A stretch of DNA of 64,000 nucleotides from Octopus bimaculoides. Lineage: Eukaryota. The notes below the pieces were generated by a model, which had not been told where the DNA came from, searched no databases, and was given only the letters and a program-made list of their open reading frames with translations. The DNA is taken from NCBI RefSeq assembly GCF_001194135.2, contig NC_068990.1, positions 61,443,252-61,507,251 of the forward strand. Reading direction: 5' to 3'. Made by a program: the position numbers and the translations under genes. Shown in pieces: positions 1 through 56,880 of the stretch (within the stretch, counting starts at the first letter, position 1; each line of letters opens with the position of its first letter).

Positions 1-1031
1 GTTCACTGATGAAAAGAAATTTGACATCAAATAGACAGCTTGAATGAAAGAACTTGCAGAAGATGGCTTGCAAAATTCAGAAGTAGAGATTTCAGCCTTG
101 AAGATGAAGATTAAACAGGACGTCCAGTTGAGTCTGATGATAAGCTCCTTGAGGCATTACTTGAAGAAAATCCTGCATTATCAGTTGAAGAATTGGCAAT
201 AAAGCTTAGTTCAAACCATACAACTGTTCTTCATCATCTTCAACAACTTGGAAAGGTTCCTAAACTTGGAAAATGGGTGCCTCATTAATTGTCCAAAAGG
301 AACCGCAAATCCCGAGTTGGCATCTGCTCTTCTCTCTATTCTCGCAAACTTATTTCACCCTTTTGGATAGACTTGTGACTGGTGACAAAAAATGGATCTT
401 CTATTGAAATGTTAAACATCGTAAACAGTGGCTTGGTAAAAAGAAAAAAGTTCAACCACAACCGAAAAGGGAACTTCATGGAAAAAAGGTTCTTCTCTCT
501 ATCTGGTGGGATTGCAAAGGAGTAATTTACTTTGAATTGTTACCACCTAATGCAACAATCAATGCTCAAGTCTACTGTCAGCACTCAGAGCATTTGAACC
601 AAGCTTTGAAGAAAAAAAAACCCGCTTTAGTGAATCGAAAAAGAGTGATGTTTCATCAGGACAATGCGCAACCCCACACTGCAAAGATCACATCACAAAA
701 GATCGAAGAGCTTGGTTGGGAAAAATTTCCTCATCCACCTTAATCTCCTGACCTTGCTCCTTCAGACTACCATTTGTTTCATAGTTTAGAGAATCATTTG
801 GGGAACATAACTTTTGCAAGCCAGGTGGAGGTCGAAACTGACATTTCAGAGTTCTTCCCCTTGAGACCAAAAAAGTTTTACATTGATGGGATTAAAAAGC
901 TTGTAAACAGATGGAAGGAAGTCATAGATAATCAGGGAAAGTACATTGATGATTAAATTTCAATTAAATATAACATTTGATCACTTGTTTTCTTTATTCA
1001 AAATTCAGACAGAATTTGTGGGATGCCCTGA
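1..1031 (+). mobile_element. mariner (DD34D) transposon, degraded transposase and 3' TIR; 5' end lies outside the window
   Basis: Frameshifted translation shows KWVPH, VTGDKKWIFY, HQDNAQPH...HPP*SPDLAPSDYHLF (34 residues between the 2nd and 3rd D) and a C-terminus ending KYIDD* at 956. The end CAGACAGAATTTGTGGGATGCCCTGA is followed by TA at 1032-1033. Confidence 0.93.
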
Positions 1032-6789: not shown

Positions 6790-7092
<303 letters not shown>

Positions 7093-7750
7093 GACTTTCT
7101 GGAAGAACACAATCTGCAACGTGTTTCAGCAGACAATCCAGAAGTAGCCTGCATAAAACCTTTCCTAAAACAGAAAGCAATGATATTCCCCTATAGTTAC
7201 CACAATCATTCCTGTTGCCCTTTCCCTTATATAAGACCACCATTACTGTATCTCTCTAGTCCTTGGGTACAGATTCACTATCCCATATCCTGCCAAACAA
7301 GGAGTGAAGTTGCTGCAGAAGTTTCTCACCACCATGCTGCAACAACTTTGCATGAATGCCATCCATACCCGGAGACCTTCCATTATTCAACCTTGAGACA
7401 GCTACTGCAACTTCTTCCAGCATTGGTGGTTTTGCGAGAGCCGCCTTCACGGGTAACTCAGGAATGAGATTGAGAATATCCTCACTAACTACTGACTGCT
7501 GATTCAAAAGTCCATCAAAATGTTCTCGCCACCTTCACAGAATTCCTTGTGAATCATGAAGAAGTTCTTTATCATCCTTGCTTCGAAGTGGTGTCATCAG
7601 AGAAGAAGTCGGGCCATAAACTTCTCGCAAGAGACCATATAACAGCTTTGTGTTATTGGAATCTGACGCTGCCTTATCTCATCAGGCTTCTTACTCCACC
7701 ACGTATCCCTCATCTGAGAGAGCCTCCACCTCACACGTGATTTTACATCC
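7093..7750 (-). mobile_element. RTE-clade (BovB-like) LINE ORF2 fragment
   Basis: Translations RWREHFDGLLN, NGRSPGMDGIHAKLLQHGG and VVLYKGKGNRNDCGNYRGISLLSVLGKV (pre-RT to RT domain 1). Confidence 0.92.
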
Positions 7751-18007: not shown

Positions 18008-18934
18008 NNNNNNNNNNNNNNNNNNNNNNNNNNNNNNNNNNNNNNNNNNNNNNNNNNNNNNNNNNNNNNNNNNNNNNNNNNNNNNNNNNNNNNNNNNNNN
18101 NNNNNNNNNNNNNNNNNNNNNNNNNNNNNNNNNNNNNNNNNNNNNNNNNNNNNNNNNNNNNNNNNNNNNNNNNNNNNNNNNNNNNNNNNNNNNNNNNNNN
18201 NNNNNNNNNNNNNNNNNNNNNNNNNNNNNNNNNNNNNNNNNNNNNNNNNNNNNNNNNNNNNNNNNNNNNNNNNNNNNNNNNNNNNNNNNNNNNNNNNNNN
18301 NNNNNNNNNNNNNNNNNNNNNNNNNNNNNNNNNNNNNNNNNNNNNNNNNNNNNNNNNNNNNNNNNNNNNNNNNNNNNNNNNNNNNNNNNNNNNNNNNNNN
18401 NNNNNNNNNNNNNNNNNNNNNNNNNNNNNNNNNNNNNNNNNNNNNNNNNNNNNNNNNNNNNNNNNNNNNNNNNNNNNNNNNNNNNNNNNNNNNNNNNNNN
18501 NNNNNNNNNNNNNNNNNNNNNNNNNNNNNNNNNNNNNNNNNNNNNNNNNNNNNNNNNNNNNNNNNNNNNNNNNNNNNNNNNNNNNNNNNNNNNNNNNNNN
18601 NNNNNNNNNNNNNNNNNNNNNNNNNNNNNNNNNNNNNNNNNNNNNNNNNNNNNNNNNNNNNNNNNNNNNNNNNNNNNNNNNNNNNNNNNNNNNNNNNNNN
18701 NNNNNNNNNNNNNNNNNNNNNNNNNNNNNNNNNNNNNNNNNNNNNNNNNNNNNNNNNNNNNNNNNNNNNNNNNNNNNNNNNNNNNNNNNNNNNNNNNNNN
18801 NNNNNNNNNNNNNNNNNNNNNNNNNNNNNNNNNNNNNNNNNNNNNNNNNNNNNNNNNNNNNNNNNNNNNNNNNNNNNNNNNNNNNNNNNNNNNNNNNNNN
18901 NNNNNNNNNNNNNNNNNNNNNNNNNNNNNNNNNN
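18008..18934. other. assembly gap (one of about 20 N runs, most flanked by microsatellites)
   Basis: N bases. ORFs crossing such gaps are artefacts. Confidence 0.99.
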
Positions 18935-19192: not shown

Positions 19193-19621
19193 ACAAGCCT
19201 CTTCCAGTTTCTGTCTACCAAATCCACTCATGAGGCTTTGGTCAGCCTGAGGCTACGGTAAAAGACACTTGCCCAAGGTGCCAGGCAATGGGGTTAAACC
19301 CAAAACTATGTGGTTAGGAAGCAAGCTTCTTACCACACAGCCATGCCTACACCTATATGTATATGTATTCATATATACATATATGTACGTAAGATTTTTC
19401 TTTGTGTTTGATTTAAATTATTCTAGAGAGTGTGTAAGCTGGTTGCTAACAAAGCAACAAAACTTTTTGAGTTAAGAGAGTTCCTGGTAAATATGTGGTT
19501 GAGATGGTATGTTGATTGGACTGTCAATGTATATACCCAAGTGTGTGCATCTATTCAAATAAGAATCTCACATGGAGAATGTTTGGAATTTTCTGTGTAT
19601 ATGTATGTATGTATGTATATA

Positions 19622-23591: not shown

Positions 23592-24366
23592 NNNNNNNNN
23601 NNNNNNNNNNNNNNNNNNNNNNNNNNNNNNNNNNNNNNNNNNNNNNNNNNNNNNNNNNNNNNNNNNNNNNNNNNNNNNNNNNNNNNNNNNNNNNNNNNNN
23701 NNNNNNNNNNNNNNNNNNNNNNNNNNNNNNNNNNNNNNNNNNNNNNNNNNNNNNNNNNNNNNNNNNNNNNNNNNNNNNNNNNNNNNNNNNNNNNNNNNNN
23801 NNNNNNNNNNNNNNNNNNNNNNNNNNNNNNNNNNNNNNNNNNNNNNNNNNNNNNNNNNNNNNNNNNNNNNNNNNNNNNNNNNNNNNNNNNNNNNNNNNNN
23901 NNNNNNNNNNNNNNNNNNNNNNNNNNNNNNNNNNNNNNNNNNNNNNNNNNNNNNNNNNNNNNNNNNNNNNNNNNNNNNNNNNNNNNNNNNNNNNNNNNNN
24001 NNNNNNNNNNNNNNNNNNNNNNNNNNNNNNNNNNNNNNNNNNNNNNNNNNNNNNNNNNNNNNNNNNNNNNNNNNNNNNNNNNNNNNNNNNNNNNNNNNNN
24101 NNNNNNNNNNNNNNNNNNNNNNNNNNNNNNNNNNNNNNNNNNNNNNNNNNNNNNNNNNNNNNNNNNNNNNNNNNNNNNNNNNNNNNNNNNNNNNNNNNNN
24201 NNNNNNNNNNNNNNNNNNNNNNNNNNNNNNNNNNNNNNNNNNNNNNNNNNNNNNNNNNNNNNNNNNNNNNNNNNNNNNNNNNNNNNNNNNNNNNNNNNNN
24301 NNNNNNNNNNNNNNNNNNNNNNNNNNNNNNNNNNNNNNNNNNNNNNNNNNNNNNNNNNNNNNNNNN

Positions 24367-24442: not shown

Positions 24443-25041
24443 TAAGGATTATTTCAGTTACATAATCTTTAGTTGGTTCAATTAACAATACTCCTCTTAT
24501 ACAATTTGTCTATGCTTGTGAGATGCAAATGAAATCATAAAGCTGCATTTTAAGGCATTGGGTCAAGACTAAAAATGTGAAGACTTGGTAAGGCAATAAC
24601 TCAAGCATTTTTTACTGTGAATTTGTTGTTATAGGTAGATCTTACTGTAATATATAACTAATTTTTGTATTATTCTATTTATCATACTAATTAATTATGA
24701 ACTGCTATTATTTCTTTATAACCTATTTTCAAATGTTTAATTATTAATTAATAATTAAGAAAATGAATTTTTTAAAGTGCAAAAAATATTTTAATTGCAT
24801 TATTTTTAAATTTTTAATAGAAGTAACGAGTAATAACAAATAGAAGTAATAAAATTTTTAGTTTTAATAAAAGCTAATATTTTCTAAATCTAAATATTTT
24901 ATTTGAAATTTTATCCTTAGCTGCAATATTTTAAGAAAAAAAATTTTTGTTCTATACTTTACCTGATGTAATAACTTGTCCTGTAATTTTCCAAGTTTAT
25001 AATGTTAAGATTATTATTACGCTTGCTCACATTTTCCCATG

Positions 25042-25089
<48 letters not shown>

Positions 25090-26284
25090 GATGGGCTTCT
25101 TTTAGTTTCTGTCTACCAAATCCACTCTCAAGGCTTTGGTCTGCCCAAGGTTATAGTAAAAGAGACTTGCCCAAGGTGCCACGCTGTGGGACTGAACCTA
25201 GACTCACGTGCTTGGGAAGCAAGCTTCTTAACACACGCACCCACACATACACATGCACACATATATACACATGGACAATGGACTTCCATGTAGTTTCAAT
25301 GTACTAAGTTCACTTGCAAGGCATTGATCAGCTCAGGGCTATAGTAAAAAAATATGCTTGTCCTGGGTGTTGCACAGTGAGACTGAACCTGGAACCGTGT
25401 GGTTGTAAAATGAGCTTCTTAACCACACAGCTATGTCTGCAAATAGTGGAGTGAATTTAGAGGACTATAATCTCTTGTATAAATTTATCGGGCAGCCTTA
25501 TGGGTCCATGCAAGAAACTGATACTGCCATGTAGAATGCTTAACCCATTACCTACCAGTGATCTCATATGAGATCACTTAAAAATTACAAATTTCGTAAT
25601 TTTCTGTCAATATTTACACATATCTAACCTTTTTTGCTATATCTACTAGGTATATTTCTCTGATATTCAAATGAGGTTTGCTAATGTTTCACCCAATATC
25701 TCGCATATTTCTATTTAAAATGTTATTTTGAAATGTTATTTTGATCATTCCAGCGTGTTTCTAAGGCTGTTTTATGCTAGAAATCAAAGTTTCATAAAAA
25801 AAATTCCAGTTAATAAAATTATGGAAGGTATTGGGTTAAGGTTCTTTTGATGAGCTTGTGTATTGGTCACTCTCTTCTTTGCCACTCCAGATCATATCCC
25901 TACCCACAGCTATCAGGGCACAGATTGCTTCCCGCAAGTGCAAAGTCTGCGAGTCAGAGTGGCTGTTCCAGTGCATTTCCCTTACTGTCCTCTGGGGCAA
26001 TGCCTTTTCCATTTTGTCTGCTGGTGCCATGACAAATGTTTCTATTTTGTGAGAGGCACGACTCTCCATTAACCATTTACCTATAAGTCTGAATAATAAA
26101 TCATAAGAACTGGCGATGTAGGTTGGGTGGGGAGTGCTAAGCAGTAATAAGTAAAATTGTAATGTTATTATCAGTCTGAATATGTTTGACGCACGTTCGA
26201 ACTGGGGAACAAGCCACTCACTGTGTTTTGTCACGGAGAATGTATCTTTCTTGTAGACAAATGGTGTATATACACGTAGATCAG

Positions 26285-26376
26285 CTCGCAGTACCATCTA
26301 CCTAGACTGAGATGTTAACATTTCGGAGCAGTTGTCTCCTCATCAGTCACAGACACTAAGCAGATGGCACTGCAAG
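26285..26376 (-). ncRNA. extended type I hammerhead ribozyme with an intact catalytic core
   Basis: Minus strand: GCAGUGCCAUCUGCUUAG ugucug UGA CUGAUGA GGAG acaacug CUCC GAA AUG uuaa CAU C^ UCA gu CUAGGUAGAUGGUACUGC. All core nucleotides are present. Stem II is 4 bp, stem III 3-4 bp, stem I is 3 bp + internal loop + 18-21 bp. The AUC cleavage site lies between 26311 and 26310. Confidence 0.9.
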
Positions 26377-26612
26377 TAGAATTAAGAGATTACCTCTCTT
26401 ATGCTTTTCCAGTCACCGTACGATGACTGGCAGTGCTATATGGTGGCTCACTGTCAGTAAATTACGGAGGGTGAGAGCTAAGCAGTAATAAGTGAAATTA
26501 CATTGTTATCATCAATTCAAATATGCCTGATGCATGTTCGAACTGGAGAACAAGCTACTCACATTTTGTCATGGAGAAAAGCATAAGAGAGGTAAGCTCT
26601 TAATTCAGCTCA

Positions 26613-26698
26613 CAGTGCCATCTGCTTAGTGTCTGTGACCAATAAGGAGACAATTACTCTGAAATGTTAACATCTCACAGTTTAGGTAGATGGTGCTG
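26613..26698 (+). pseudogene. inactivated inverted copy of the same hammerhead
   Basis: Same stems, but the core CTGATGA reads CCAATAA (26639-26645) and stem II is GGAG/CTCT. Confidence 0.85.
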
Positions 26699-26934
26699 CA
26701 AGCTGATCTAGGTGCATGCATGCCATTCGTCAACAAGTGAGGTATATTCTCTGTGACAAAATTCAGCGAGCAGCTTGTTCTCTAGTCAAACCATTCATCA
26801 AGCATGCTTGGACTGATAATAACATTGCATAAGAACTGGATACCACAAAATAACAAACAGGAAGCCATCAACTCCGTGTTTGTTAGAGCTTGTGTTTGGT
26901 GCAATCTTTATATTTCTATAGAACCTATTGTATG

Positions 26935-26973
<39 letters not shown>

Positions 26974-27022
26974 TCACATGCACACACATTCACACACACA
27001 CATATACACAAATATATATTAT

Positions 27023-27063
<41 letters not shown>

Positions 27064-28224
27064 AAAGGGCTTCTTTCAGTTTCTGTCTACCAAATCCAAT
27101 TACAGCACTTTGGTTTGCTCAGAGATATAGCAGAAGACACTTGCCCAAGGTACCATGCAGTAGAACTGAACCCAAAGTCATTTGGTTGGCCAGGAAACTT
27201 CTTAACACACAGCCATACCATACCTTATTTCATGAGAGTGATTGAACTTTCATCTTCTATATCACTTCTTCAACACAGAAAGAACCTATAACTTATTCAT
27301 GAGTATAACATGTGGCATTAGACTGAGATTTATATTTTCACCTTGACTGCAATAACCAAATGTTATTCCTGGAGACATAAGTTGATATTTTCTTCTTCGC
27401 CTTCAAACACCACTTTCATTCATTCATTCATTTTTTTTTTACTGTTTTACTGCCATTTTTTAATATTCTATGATAAATATTTTTTTAGATATTTTGTTAT
27501 TTGGTATTTTCTGTTTCATAAACGTACTATCTATGTATACCATATTTCCTTGACATACAAGCCAATGTAGTATATAGTGTAGACATTCAAATATTGCTGC
27601 AATCTTTCCAAATCGTGTTACATTTCACATGGGATTTTCAGTCCTCCAAACTTGTCTTGGTAAATACGACAACCAAGAATTTTGACTGTAAATTTTGGTC
27701 TGAAAAATTTGAATTGCATTTCAGAAAATACAGTATCATCATCATCGTCGTCATCGTCATCGTCATCATCATCATCATCACCATTTAACATTCATTTTCC
27801 ATGTTGGCATGGGTTGGATGGCTTGACAGGAACTGGCAAGGCCAGGGACCACACCGGGTGCCATAGTCTGCTTTGGCTGGGTTTCTATGGCTGGAAGCCT
27901 GCCCTTCCTAACACCAGTTGTTGTAACAATTTTATTTCATATAGGTTATGAGGCATGTGAAATTTAAACTTCATCATCTTATTATATAACAAGCAAATCA
28001 TGAACTTTTAGAAGAAATAACAAACACAGACAGACTTCACACCATCACCACCACCACCACCACCACCATCATGTCACATCTATTTTTCCAATGAATGATA
28101 CACAGTCAAGGATGTTCTTTATTCCTGTCAAAGAAAACTGCTTCAGTGCCTCCATAATGGTTATGACAAATGTATGATACACACATAAGCAAAGAATGGC
28201 AATTTTTCTCTGTTGAGTACATAC

Positions 28225-29649: not shown

Positions 29650-31809
29650 TCGTCGTCGTCGTTGTCGTTTAACGTCCGCTTTCCATGTTAGCATGGGTTG
29701 GACGATTTGACTGAGGACTGGTGAAACTAGATGGTTACACCAGTCTCCAATCTGATTTGGCATAGTTTCTACAGCTGGATGCCCTTCCTAACGCCAACCA
29801 CTCAGAGAGTGTAGTGGGTGCTTTTACGTNNNNNNNNNNNNNNNNNNNNNNNNNNNNNNNNNNNNNNNNNNNNNNNNNNNNNNNNNNNNNNNNNNNNNNN
29901 NNNNNNNNNNNNNNNNNNNNNNNNNNNNNNNNNNNNNNNNNNNNNNNNNNNNNNNNNNNNNNNNNNNNNNNNNNNNNNNNNNNNNNNNNNNNNNNNNNNN
30001 NNNNNNNNNNNNNNNNNNNNNNNNNNNNNNNNNNNNNNNNNNNNNNNNNNNNNNNNNNNNNNNNNNNNNNNNNNNNNNNNNNNNNNNNNNNNNNNNNNNN
30101 NNNNNNNNNNNNNNNNNNNNNNNNNNNNNNNNNNNNNNNNNNNNNNNNNNNNNNNNNNNNNNNNNNNNNNNNNNNNNNNNNNNNNNNNNNNNNNNNNNNN
30201 NNNNNNNNNNNNNNNNNNNNNNNNNNNNNNNNNNCTGGCAACGGTCCCGCTCGAAAGATTTCATGTGTTGCCCGCACATGGGCCAGTCCAGGAGCACTGG
30301 CAACGATCTCGCTCGAAAATCCTACGACGGCCCCGCACAATAGCCAGTTCAGGGGCACGGCAACGATCTATTTCTATTACACTTGCCTCAACAGGTCTTC
30401 GCAAGTGGGGTTTAGTGTCCAATTTTAATTTAACTCGATTTCGATTTCACTTGCCTCAACAGGCCTACGCAGTGGAGTTTAGTGTCCAACTTAACTTGAT
30501 TTCGATTTCACTTGTCTCAACAGGTCTTCACAAGTTGAATTTAGTGTCCAATGAAGGAAGGAAGGTATGCATAACTGGACTGGCTGGGTCTTAGCTTGGC
30601 TTGCCGGGTCTTCTCGCGCACAGTATATTTCCAAAGGTCTCGGTCAGAAGTCATCGCCTCGGTGAGGCCCAATGTTCGAAGGTCGTGCCTTACCACCTCA
30701 TCCCAGGTCTTCCTGGGCCTACCTCTTCCACAGGTTCCCTCAACTGCTAAGGTGTGGCACTTTTTCACACAGCTATCATCATCCATTTTCGCTACATGAC
30801 CATACCAGCGCAGTTGTCTCTCTTGCACTCTACAACTGATGCTTCGTAAGTTCAACTTTTCTCTCAAGGTACTGATACTCTGTCTAGTATGCACACTGAC
30901 ATTACACATCCATCGGAGCATTCCTTGCGAGCCTATGCATGTCCTCAGCAGTCACGGCCCATGTTTCACTGCCATGAAGCATGGCTGTTCGTACACATGC
31001 GTCATACAATCTGCCTTTTACTCTGAGAGAGAGACCCTTTGTCGCCAGCAGAGGTAAGAGCTCTCTGAACTTTGCCCAGGCTATTCTAATTCTAGCAGCT
31101 ACGCTTTCAGCGCACCCACNNNNNNNNNNNNNNNNNNNNNNNNNNNNNNNNNNNNNNNNNNNNNNNNNNNNNNNNNNNNNNNNNNNNNNNNNNNNNNNNN
31201 NNNNNNNNNNNNNNNNNNNNNNNNNNNNNNNNNNNNNNNNNNNNNNNNNNNNNNNNNNNNNNNNNNNNNNNNNNNNNNNNNNNNNNNNNNNNNNNNNNNN
31301 NNNNNNNNNNNNNNNNNNNNNNNNNNNNNNNNNNNNNNNNNNNNNNNNNNNNNNNNNNNNNNNNNNNNNNNNNNNNNNNNNNNNNNNNNNNNNNNNNNNN
31401 NNNNNNNNNNNNNNNNNNNNNNNNNNNNNNNNNNNNNNNNNNNNNNNNNNNNNNNNNNNNNNNNNNNNNNNNNNNNNNNNNNNNNNNNNNNNNNNNNNNN
31501 NNNNNNNNNNNATAAATAGGAGGGGGCTGAGGACAGAACCTTGGTGGACCCCTACCTCCACCCGGAATTCTTCACTGTACTCTCTGCCAATCCTCACCTT
31601 ACTGACAGAGTTTCTGTACATGGCTCGCACAGCTCTCACTAACCATTCTTCTATCCCTAGTTTCCTCATTGACCACCAGATGAGAGATCAGAGGACCCTG
31701 TCAAAGGCTTTCTCCATATCAACGAAAGCCAGGAACAGAGGTTTATCCTTGGCTAGGTATTTCTCCTGAAGCTGTCTTACCAGAAATATAGCATCAGTGG
31801 TGCTTTTCC

Positions 31810-55384: not shown

Positions 55385-56880
55385 CAAGTTAATCTGGAAA
55401 AGGATGAATTTTCCAATTCTTCAAAATATATTTATATATATGCTTGCAACTGCTGAAAATTTCAGACCTAGATTTCAGTAGAGAGTTAGGGATCTTAGAT
55501 CTGAACAGGACCTGCACTCTTTCAGCTAAACAAAGCTTACATTTATTCGATCCATTAAGATAATGTATAATTTCTCAATTACTTTCCACTTAATCACATA
55601 CGGTCTTTCATTATCTTTCATACTCCATGCCTAGCTATCCAACTTAGTAGCTTTGTTTTTGTCGTTATGTTGGAAAGAGGCTATATGATTGGCATAGTGC
55701 TTTTTAAATTCTCCTTCACATAATCCAATATAGGTCTTCTACTCCGTTGTATTATTATTAAGGTTGTAGTAACTTCTGCCTCATATATGATAAATTTAAT
55801 CGTTACAACTGGATTTATGCTCTTGTTATTGACCACATGTAACAATACTCTTCATACTGGGGTAGCAGCTATATGATAATTTCCCAGAATGCCTATCAAA
55901 TATTTTCCTGTTTCTGTGAGTTGCTGGAAAGTGTTTTTCTAGGAGAGATAGGAATATTTTTAGCTATACTAGTTTTTATATTAAGGGAAAAGAGAGGGGC
56001 AAACCAAATAATTTTCCTTGACCTATTTCTTAGGTCACTTATTATTATTATTATTATTATGAATACTAGAAGGCTTATGTATTACTTTATCTTTGATGCC
56101 ACTAGATCTATTATTATCATTCTTATTAGTATTAGAGGTATTATATATTAAATTATTTTTTAAGCCATTAAATGCTTGGGCATTGTTATAGTTGGGGTCT
56201 GCTTTCTCAAAAATGTCTTTAGCAGAAGAGAGATTAGATACTCTGTTACTGATATTAACTATCAAGATTTTAAATATTACAGGAGGGTGACAAGATTGTT
56301 TATGTATATATGTGAATTTCTCATTAGGCTTACGGAAAGGCTTATATGATGATTTCACATCTAGGGAAACATGTAAATAATCAACTACAGACAGATTAGT
56401 AGCTACTCTAATTTTAAGGCCTAATTGATTAAAGTTAGAAATCTATCAAGGGTGTGACCATCACACCCATAGGAAATACCTAAACTGTCGTCTCAGTATG
56501 GACAAAAGTCATGAGATGGGTACTTATATCTCAATGTATATAATATAAACAGACCCACAAGATCACAGGCATCAGCACTATCATATAAGCCCGTAGATAC
56601 ATCAAATAGTTTGTCATTATGTGACTTTTTTTACCCATGCTAACCCTTTACTGAACAGTAGTGTTTTCCTTGCATGCTTGATAAAATCTAGGTCCATACG
56701 ATCAACATATGGTTTAACAAATTCAATAACTTTATTAAGCAGTAATCCAGATATAGAGGGATAAAAGTCTTTAATATCAAACTGGGTAAATTTAGCCTTA
56801 TTCTTATTCTTAATATTCTTAAACTGCTATTCCATTGTTGAAGCCTAGTTGTTTCTCTAATTTCATTACTAATGTTTCTA
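55385..56880 (-). mobile_element. 5'-truncated Penelope-like element (RT + GIY-YIG), degraded
   Basis: KFTQFDIKDF.PSI, KHARKTLLF, FDVSTGLYDSADACDLVGL, YKPFRKPNEKFTYIHKQSCHPP, IIWFAP.FS, KTYIGLCEGEFKK.YANH, NGSNKCKLCLAEK, SEIFSSCKH. Confidence 0.93.

What the first reader, a model, noticed from the sequence alone, without database searches (positions are those of the whole stretch)
26285..26376. Apparently intact extended type I hammerhead ribozyme on the minus strand
Seen: the full core CUGAUGA (26346-26340), stem II GGAG/CUCC with a 7-nt loop, GAAA, stem III formed by the perfect palindrome AUGUUAACAU, and cleavage triplet AUC. Stem I has 3 bp, an asymmetric internal loop (UGUCUG/GU) and a further 18-21 bp with G:U wobbles. 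Established: natural fast type I hammerheads use a stem I bulge that docks on loop II, and they occur in Penelope pLTRs and in animal retrozymes (newt satellite 2, schistosome SM-alpha). Inference: this is a cleavage-competent ribozyme. The palindromic stem III would allow it to work as a monomer or a dimer. I cannot tell whether this family is already described in cephalopods.
Basis: partly seen in the sequence, partly recalled or inferred. Interest (0 to 1): 0.9.

Follow-up and report, generated by a model that had tools for sequence, protein, structure and literature searches.

The report
Decayed hammerhead ribozyme retroelement in octopus
This is a real type I hammerhead ribozyme sequence carried by an old, short, non-coding retroelement insertion in an octopus-like genome; it is a known kind of element, and this copy has a complete catalytic core but a damaged stem I.

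Summary
These are core CUGAUGA 26346-26340, helix II GGAG/CUCC, GAAA, palindrome AUGUUAACAU, C17 at 26311, and a 21-bp closing stem.

The bare motif is expected about 0.01 times per window by chance. Its position inside the closing stem, and inside a repeat, argues against chance.

The hammerhead lies in a 341-nt unit. The locus holds 1.3 tandem units on the minus strand plus an inverted 5'-truncated copy on the plus strand. A 12-bp direct repeat (candidate target-site duplication) flanks both. This matches animal retrozymes and Penelope-like insertions.

The inverted copy (HH2) has a dead core, CCAAUAA, but a perfect 6-bp helix I. HH1 lacks two bases (CA) there.

No Rfam hammerhead model reaches threshold. 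The best match is 14.7 bits against a gathering score of 48.5.

I could not reach any paralogue outside the window, so I could not test covariation. Cleavage is untested.

Verdict: a new member of a known kind, of modest interest.

The parts
26114..26827 (.). Whole composite insertion: an inverted 5'-truncated copy plus 1.3 tandem units.
   Evidence: Repeat anatomy. Bounded by the 12-bp direct repeat.
26102..26113 (+). Left copy of the candidate target-site duplication, CATAAGAACTGG.
   Evidence: Exact 12-mer shared with 26828-26839. No shuffle of 2000 reached 12. Local alignment score 17 against a shuffle maximum of 16.
26828..26839 (+). Right copy of the candidate target-site duplication, CATAAGAACTGG. 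It begins exactly where homology of the inverted copy ends.
26285..26376 (-). HH1: type I hammerhead with a complete core and a 21-bp closing stem of helix I.
26340..26346 (-). HH1 core C3-A9, CUGAUGA.
26325..26339 (-). HH1 helix II, GGAG/CUCC, with the 7-nt loop ACAACUG.
26311..26324 (-). G12 A13 A14, helix III palindrome AUGUUAACAU (A15.1 at 26321 to U16.1 at 26312) and C17 (26311). The predicted cleavage is between 26311 and 26310.
   Evidence: read directly from the sequence.
26306..26310 (-). HH1 helix I 3' strand, UCA + GU. Two bases (CA) are missing here relative to HH2.
26377..26469 (-). The unit upstream of HH1. It holds a hairpin CCAGUCA/UGACUGG and an AAGAGA/UCUCUU leader.
26114..26284 (-). 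Spacer and 3' segment 'A' of the full unit. This is the 3' end of the insertion on the minus strand. There is no poly(A).
26470..26578 (-). 5'-truncated upstream tandem unit (spacer + A), 80% identical to 26129-26240. Period 338-341 nt.
   Evidence: (D6).
26576..26827 (+). Inverted 5'-truncated copy of the unit (leader, HH2, spacer, part of A), 81% identical overall.
   Evidence: (I1, I2).
26609..26702 (+). HH2: the same ribozyme with a dead core CCAAUAA (26639-26645). It keeps a perfect 6-bp helix I (26633-26638 with 26675-26680), loop 1 UGU/U and the closing stem.

Best explanation
The locus is an old, single insertion of a short (341-nt unit), non-coding retroelement that carries a hammerhead. 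It is of the animal 'non-LTR retrozyme' type and was most likely mobilised in trans by a Penelope-like element.

Inferred mechanism. A multimeric or circular RNA of the element was processed by its canonical type I hammerhead. That ribozyme had helix I of 6 bp, helix II of 4 bp, and helix III of 2 bp plus a palindromic UUAA loop. It cleaved after C17. The RNA was reverse-transcribed for more than one unit length at a nicked target. This gave 1.3 tandem units, an adjacent inverted 5'-truncated copy and a target-site duplication.

Since insertion the copies have diverged neutrally by about 11-28%, depending on the segment. HH2 lost the core through three transitions. HH1 kept the whole core but lost CA from the 3' strand of helix I.

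HH1 is therefore a relic. It may still cleave slowly in vitro as a minimal hammerhead.

Shown: the sequence features, the repeat anatomy, the flanking direct repeat and the differences between the copies. Inferred: the direction of the changes, the mobilisation route and the activity.
For: - Complete core and type I topology.
- The motif sits inside a 21-bp closing stem, z = -6.0.
- A unit of 338-341 nt is repeated in partial tandem, with an inverted copy.
- A 12-bp direct repeat lies at both outer borders.
- There is no ORF with homologues, no tRNA-like head and no poly(A) tail.
- The unit is 42.5% GC. The inferred circular monomer folds at z = -4.3.
- HH2 shows the canonical 6-bp helix I. 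All three one-sided changes in the helices keep pairing as G:U.
- At two CpG sites HH1 has CpG where HH2 has TpG or CpA, so HH1 keeps the older state there.
- Literature. Metazoan type I hammerheads have helix I 6 bp, helix II 4 bp, and a short helix III with a palindromic loop (PMC4209133). Retrozyme repeats are 170-400 nt, have low GC and have TSDs longer than 4 bp (PMC7229834). Penelope-like insertions are partial tandems, often with an adjacent inverted 5'-truncated copy (PMC8557442). Retrozymes are proposed to derive from PLEs (bioRxiv 10.64898/2026.07.22.740005). Hammerhead pairs on opposite strands 100-700 bp apart are noted in PMC4209133.
Against: - No Rfam hammerhead hit at threshold.
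- Only two copies exist, both in this locus. There are no compensatory changes.
- No other family member is in the window or in 20 kb of Octopus vulgaris sequence. I did not find the family in the collections I could scan.
- I could not establish the copy number in the genome.
- The left flank just outside the 12-mer also resembles the element's end. The 'TSD' could therefore partly reflect insertion into an older related sequence.
- Only one sense hammerhead is present, so a monomer cannot be excised from this locus.
Confidence: 0.75

Rival explanations
1. HH1 is a fully functional ribozyme kept by selection. Either it is a live retrozyme copy or it has been domesticated, like the intronic hammerheads of amniotes. 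In this reading the 6x2 internal loop is a real docking site for loop 2.
For: All six differences in the core, helix II and loop 2 are compatible with change on the HH2 lineage only. The leader + HH half is more conserved than the 3' half: 87% against 74%, Fisher p = 0.01. Penelope hammerheads of D. virilis work, weakly, with a 2-bp helix I (PMC4209133).
Against: - The sister copy shows that the 6-bp helix I is the family's form, and HH1 has a 2-nt gap there.
- The hammerhead-compatible fold is strongly disfavoured.
- There is no partner ribozyme on the same strand.
- The copies are 11-28% diverged, as expected for neutral decay.
- No host gene context was found.
Confidence: 0.08
2. The hammerhead-like motif is a coincidence inside an unrelated hairpin or inverted repeat, such as a MITE arm or a miRNA-like hairpin.
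For: The bare descriptor occurs by chance about once per 100 windows. The only Rfam matches over the whole hairpin are weak miRNA-type hits: mir-458 at 24 bits against a cut-off of 59. There is no covariation.
Against: - The core sits in register between the strands of the stem.
- HH2 adds an independent hammerhead-specific feature, a 6-bp helix I next to the core position.
- Helix III is palindromic, helix II is 4 bp and closes with G10.1-C11.1. Neither was required by chance.
- The context is a 341-nt tandem/inverted unit with a TSD.
- A 50-nt loop is too large for an animal pre-miRNA.
Confidence: 0.05
3. It is a SINE-like element of the Schistosoma Sm-alpha type. That would be pol III-transcribed and LINE-mobilised. 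Alternatively it is a fragment of satellite DNA made by unequal crossing-over rather than by retroposition.
For: Hammerheads occur in Sm-alpha and in newt and cricket satellites (PMC6155905). A GTTCGAAC stretch in segment A resembles a B box. LINE RT fragments lie nearby.
Against: - ARAGORN finds no tRNA-like sequence.
- There is no poly(A) or simple-repeat tail at either 3' end.
- The tandem-plus-inverted composite with outward-facing 3' ends and a flanking direct repeat fits Penelope-type insertion (PMC8557442).
- Only 1.3 units are present, not an array.
Confidence: 0.1

Closest known systems
Metazoan non-LTR retrozymes (Cervera & de la Pena 2020, PMC7229834), e.g. mussel repeats of 350-390 bp, coral repeats of 220-240 bp, axolotl repeats of 330-350 bp
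   Same: - Type I hammerhead.
- Unit of 341 nt in head-to-tail arrangement.
- GC 42.5%.
- No ORF, LTR or poly(A).
- TSD longer than 4 bp.
- Short helix III with a palindromic tetraloop.
- A structured monomer RNA.
   Different: - Only 1.3 units are present, with a single sense ribozyme, so no monomer can be released here.
- HH1 has a 2-nt gap in helix I.
- An inverted copy is attached.
- Copy number and circRNA expression are unknown.
- I found no description of a cephalopod family in the papers searched.
Penelope-like element insertions and their pLTR hammerheads (PMC4209133, PMC8557442)
   Same: - Partial tandem plus an adjacent inverted 5'-truncated copy.
- 3' ends face outward.
- Hammerheads lie on opposite strands a few hundred bp apart.
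- Helix III is palindromic.
   Different: - No RT/GIY-YIG ORF is present.
- The period is 341 nt, not 3-4 kb.
- The ribozyme has the canonical sizes (helix II 4 bp, no extra base between A9 and G10.1, a real helix III). It is not the min-HHR form.
Schistosoma Sm-alpha and newt satellite 2 hammerheads (Rfam Hammerhead_1, RF00163)
   Same: Type I topology, the same invariant core, and an internal loop in helix I followed by a closing stem. The newt ribozyme acts as a dimer through a weak helix III.
   Different: - It does not reach the Rfam score.
- The loop sequences differ. Whether they can make the known loop 1-loop 2 contacts could not be tested.
- The closing stem is unusually long, at 21 bp.
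Hammerhead_1 annotations in the giant squid genome (PMC6962438: 235 loci above the Rfam cut-off)
   Same: This shows that type I hammerheads have already been recorded in a cephalopod genome.
   Different: Those loci pass the Rfam threshold and this one does not. Their sequences and repeat context are not described, so the relationship is unknown.

Membership tests
Hammerhead ribozyme, type I | Invariant core: C3 U4 G5 A6 N7 G8 A9, G12 A13 A14, A15.1-U16.1, H17 (not G) | tested here: met
   CUGAUGA 26346-26340, GAAA 26324-26321, U16.1 at 26312, C17 at 26311. HH2 fails this test with CCAAUAA.
Hammerhead ribozyme, type I | Three helices around the core with helix I open-ended, and G10.1-C11.1 closing helix II | tested here: met
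   Helix II is 4 bp with G-C at 10.1-11.1. Helix III is 3 pairs including 15.1-16.1. Helix I is 3 bp followed by 21 bp.
Hammerhead ribozyme, type I | Covariance-model score at or above the Rfam gathering cut-off (RF00163 and the rest of clan CL00010) | tested here: not met
   No hit in the window at gathering. None at E<=10 on 701 nt. The best clan member on 67 nt is Hammerhead_3, at 14.7 bits against 48.5.
Hammerhead ribozyme, type I | Helices supported by compensatory changes among relatives | tested here: inconclusive
   Only two sequences are available. There are 0 double-sided changes, 3 one-sided G:U-preserving changes and 2 broken pairs in the outer stem of HH2.
Hammerhead ribozyme, type I | Mg2+-dependent self-cleavage 3' of position 17 | not testable with these tools
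   This needs in vitro transcription. Thermodynamic modelling gives a low share of the active fold.
Canonical metazoan type I hammerhead (PMC4209133) | Helix I 6 bp and helix II 4 bp, with interacting loops 1 and 2 | tested here: inconclusive
   Helix II is 4 bp in both copies. Helix I is 6 bp in HH2, but in HH1 it is only 3 bp (or 1+3 bp with a 2-nt bulge). The loop contacts cannot be tested.
Canonical metazoan type I hammerhead (PMC4209133) | Short helix III (1-2 bp beyond 15.1-16.1) capped by a 2-4 nt palindromic loop | tested here: met
   U-A and G-C pairs plus the UUAA loop. The whole AUGUUAACAU is a palindrome, identical in both copies.
Metazoan non-LTR retrozyme (PMC7229834) | Short tandem repeat unit of about 170-400 bp, low GC, no ORF/LTR/PBS/PPT | tested here: met
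   Period 338-341 nt. GC 42.5%. The only ORF has no homologues or domains. However, only 1.3 units are present.
Metazoan non-LTR retrozyme (PMC7229834) | At least two same-strand hammerheads, so that a monomer RNA is released and circularised | tested here: not met
   There is one sense ribozyme only. The second copy is on the other strand and its core is dead. This holds for the locus, not necessarily for the family.
Metazoan non-LTR retrozyme (PMC7229834) | A multi-copy family in the genome, expressed as small circRNAs | not testable with these tools
   No eukaryotic genome or transcriptome could be searched. There is no further copy in the window or in L001. The collection scans were empty.
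Penelope-like element | An ORF with RT and a GIY-YIG endonuclease between pseudo-LTRs | tested here: not met
   There is no such ORF within the insertion 26114-26827 or next to it. The 341-nt period excludes a full element.
Penelope-like element | Insertion architecture: a partial tandem plus an adjacent inverted 5'-truncated copy | tested here: met
   The description is in PMC8557442.

The most novel reading that the evidence does not exclude
This is the first glimpse of an undescribed cephalopod retrozyme family that Rfam models miss. It would have a 341-nt unit and a canonical type I hammerhead with an unusually long closing stem. Intact master copies elsewhere in the genome would still make circRNAs. 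The single-event composite here (tandem + inverted copy + TSD) would then be direct structural evidence that retrozymes are inserted by the Penelope-type mechanism.
Probability: 0.3. Interest if true: 0.45.

Novelty: new member of a known kind. Interest (0 to 1): 0.25.

Why it matters
Hammerhead-bearing retroelements are already known across invertebrates, so the locus does not change the general picture.

It has some value in three ways.
1. Two decayed sister copies together let the family's ribozyme be reconstructed.
2. A retrozyme-type unit is shown here with the full Penelope-style insertion signature. This bears on the current proposal that animal retrozymes are non-autonomous Penelope derivatives.
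3. Rfam models miss both this motif and a second hammerhead-like motif in Octopus vulgaris, so cephalopod hammerheads are probably under-annotated.

Tried and rejected
**Rfam**
- At gathering on the whole window: nothing.
- At E<=10 on 701 nt: only weak hairpin or miRNA-type hits.
- On 67 nt: Hammerhead_3 at 14.7 bits.
- On HH2: nothing relevant.

**Search for paralogues**
- blastn of the unit against the window found only the local copies.
- My own covariance model from HH1+HH2 found nothing else in the window or L001.
- Two pattern scans of metagenome contigs and one of viral contigs were empty.
- A protein search with the 153-aa ORF that starts in HH1 was empty. That ORF is probably spurious; its only Pfam match is DUF5900 at E = 0.09.
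- I did not scan genome contigs, because it holds bacteria and archaea only.

**Orthologous locus**
- The best protein hit of a nearby LINE fragment led to O. vulgaris OX597824.1. That locus shares only dispersed repeats with the window and is not orthologous.
- No host gene was found in the window to anchor synteny.

**Other tests**
- tRNA-like head for a SINE model: none.
- Literal sequence search in papers: no relevant hit.
- An autonomous Penelope-like element is rejected by the 341-nt period and the lack of an ORF.
- A miRNA hairpin is rejected because of the 50-nt loop and the weak scores.
- I tried to classify a distant RT-like remnant as a possible autonomous partner. The result was unresolved.

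Full report
**1. The observation**

- Closing stem of helix I: 26376..26356 pairs with 26305..26285. There are 21 contiguous pairs, four of them G:U.
- Internal loop: UGUCUG (26355..26350) opposite GU (26307..26306).
- Three core-proximal pairs: UGA (26349..26347) with UCA (26310..26308).
- Core CUGAUGA: 26346..26340.
- Helix II: GGAG/CUCC with the 7-nt loop ACAACUG (26339..26325).
- GAAA: 26324..26321.
- Palindrome AUGUUAACAU: 26321..26312.
- C17 at 26311. The predicted scissile bond lies between 26311 and 26310.

The 92-nt RNA folds at -42.8 kcal/mol, z = -6.0 against dinucleotide shuffles.

**2. Is it more than chance?**

I wrote a hammerhead descriptor that requires CUGANGA, helix II, GAAA, helix III closed by A-U, H17 and helix I. 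It finds only this site in the window.

In 400 simulated windows of the same first-order composition, the motif with these helix sizes appears 0.01 times per window. A looser version appears 0.055 times. The bare motif is therefore not decisive when many windows are screened.

Three things make chance unlikely.
- The motif sits in register between the two strands of a 21-bp stem.
- It lies inside a repeat unit.
- The sister copy carries an additional hammerhead-specific feature (section 5).

**3. Covariance models**

- No family reaches its gathering score in the window.
- With permissive thresholds on 701 nt, only weak hairpin-type matches appear: mir-458 at 24 bits against a cut-off of 59.
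- On 67 nt the best clan member is Hammerhead_3 at 14.7 bits (cut-off 48.5, E = 0.53). It aligns only CUGAUGAG...CGAAA in the wrong topology.

**4. Repeat anatomy**

The hammerhead (HH1) is part of a unit with a period of 338-341 nt. On the minus strand the order is:
1. a 5'-truncated unit (26578..26470: spacer and segment A);
2. a full unit (26469..26114: hairpin-rich upstream part and leader, HH1, spacer, segment A).

Directly abutting its 5' end is an inverted 5'-truncated copy on the plus strand (26576-26827). It carries a second hammerhead, HH2 (26609-26702).

The composite is flanked by an exact 12-bp direct repeat, CATAAGAACTGG, at 26102-26113 and 26828-26839. The right-hand copy starts exactly where homology ends. 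No shuffle of 2000 gave a shared 12-mer.

Other features of the insertion:
- no poly(A) at either 3' end;
- no tRNA-like sequence;
- no ORF with homologues or domains;
- a unit of 42.5% GC, whose inferred circular monomer folds at -96 kcal/mol, z = -4.3.

This matches published descriptions.
- Animal non-LTR retrozymes are type I hammerheads in repeats of 170-400 bp with low GC and TSDs longer than 4 bp (PMC7229834).
- Penelope-type insertions are a partial tandem, often with an inverted 5'-truncated copy next to the 5' end (PMC8557442).
- Hammerheads on opposite strands 100-700 bp apart were noted in PLE-rich genomes (PMC4209133).

The 341-nt period excludes an autonomous Penelope-like element.

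**5. What the sister copy shows**

HH1 and HH2 differ by 13 substitutions, 12 of them transitions, and by one 2-nt indel.

HH2:
- The core is CCAAUAA (U4C, G5A, G8A), so it is catalytically dead.
- C11.1 has become U.
- Helix I is a perfect 6-bp helix, CUGUGA/UCACAG. It is followed by a 3x1 internal loop (UGU/U) and the closing stem.
- This is the canonical metazoan architecture: helix I 6 bp, helix II 4 bp, and helix III 1-2 bp plus a palindromic loop (PMC4209133).

HH1:
- It lacks the CA (HH2 26678-26679). Only 3 contiguous pairs remain, or 1+3 pairs with a 2-nt bulge.

Direction of change:
- At two CpG sites HH1 has CpG where HH2 has TpG or CpA. This points to HH1 keeping the older state there.

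Helices:
- Three one-sided changes keep pairing as G:U. Two pairs are broken in the outer stem of HH2. There are no compensatory changes.
- Two sequences cannot give covariation evidence.

**6. Can HH1 still work?**

- The hammerhead secondary structure scores -36.4 kcal/mol, against an MFE of -42.8. In the MFE, CUGUGA pairs with UCUCAG. This draws U16.1 and C17 into a helix.
- In the nearest-neighbour ensemble, the share of hammerhead-compatible structures is about 1e-5 for HH1 and 7e-3 when CA is restored. The model ignores core and tertiary interactions, so only the ratio is informative.
- A transcript running through the whole locus would pair HH1 with the antisense of HH2 in a roughly 250-bp imperfect hairpin.
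- There is no second sense copy for dimer formation through the palindromic helix III.
- Minimal hammerheads, and the D. virilis Penelope ribozyme with its 2-bp helix I, do cleave weakly in vitro (PMC4209133). Slow cleavage at high Mg2+ therefore remains plausible. Fast physiological cleavage is not supported.

**7. Age**

Identity between the direct and inverted copies is 91% in the leader, 86% in HH, 76% in the spacer and 72% in segment A. The tandem segments are 80% identical.

If the flanking repeat is a TSD, all copies arose in one event and have since drifted. This is an old relic. The 5' half is more conserved than the 3' half (p = 0.01). I cannot explain that with two copies.

**8. Organism and literature**

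- A nearby LINE fragment is 84% identical in protein to an Octopus vulgaris entry. The window shares many dispersed repeats with an O. vulgaris chromosome segment. A cephalopod origin is therefore reasonable.
- In the papers I could search, I found no description of a cephalopod hammerhead family.
- The giant squid genome paper lists 235 Hammerhead_1 hits (PMC6962438).

**9. Limits**

No eukaryotic genome collection was available. The pattern scans and protein-based searches were empty. I could not determine the family's copy number, its consensus, its covariation or its expression.

**10. Verdict**

This is a genuine type I hammerhead sequence within a retrozyme-like, Penelope-style insertion. 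The core is intact but helix I is damaged. It is a new member of a known kind, of modest interest.

Noticed in passing
L001 (Octopus vulgaris OX597824.1) about 19470-19545, minus strand: A second, unrelated type I hammerhead-like motif: ACCU|CUGAUGA|GAACC-AAAUAA-GGUUU|GAAA|AUCGAU|U|A^AGGU. It has the palindromic helix III AAUCGAUU and a closing stem AAUGAUG/CAUCAUU. It lies in a segment of about 230 nt between two (TA)n tracts. The chance of at least one descriptor hit in 20 kb is about 7%. The fold has z = -2.9. There is no Rfam hit.
   Followed up: partly
window 55600-56830, minus strand: A frameshifted remnant of an RT-like ORF (FTQFDIKDFYPSI, LYxDDSLG, KFTYIHKQSCHPP), followed by a GIY-YIG-like stretch (YIGLCEGEFKKHYANHIASF). 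There is no Pfam hit, and the word-index search was empty. Exhaustive phmmer finds 1949 cluster representatives. Homologues of 600-700 aa also have no Pfam family. The only other signal is a weak retron-RT NCBIfam match. It might be a Penelope-related autonomous element, but it remains unclassified.
   Followed up: partly
window 115-953, plus strand: A mariner/Tc1-type transposase remnant (PF01359, E = 5e-28).
   Followed up: partly
window 30541-31669 and 6881-7534, minus strand: Fragments of LINE-type reverse transcriptase, interrupted by assembly gaps. The closest named protein is from Octopus vulgaris, at 84% identity.
   Followed up: partly
window 25100-25240, 25300-25440, 27062-27210 and many other places: A high-copy SINE-like repeat. 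The same family occurs in the O. vulgaris locus at 75-92% identity. ARAGORN found no tRNA in 25000-27500.
   Followed up: no
window 26089-26113 versus 26813-26839: Beyond the exact 12-mer, the left flank resembles the terminal element sequence of the inverted copy: CTGAATAATAAAT against CTGATAATAACATTG. This could reflect microhomology at the target, a longer decayed duplication, or insertion into an older related fragment.
   Followed up: partly
window 26285-26409 versus 26158-26284: Between the direct and inverted copies, the leader + hammerhead half is significantly better conserved than the spacer + A half: 87% against 74%, p = 0.01. Within the hammerhead, the substitutions cluster in the core, helix II and loop 2. 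This is unexplained.
   Followed up: no
window, 15 N runs (e.g. 18008-18934, 23592-24366): The window contains 5324 N in 15 assembly gaps, many of them next to microsatellites. Repeats near the gaps may be incompletely represented.
   Followed up: no
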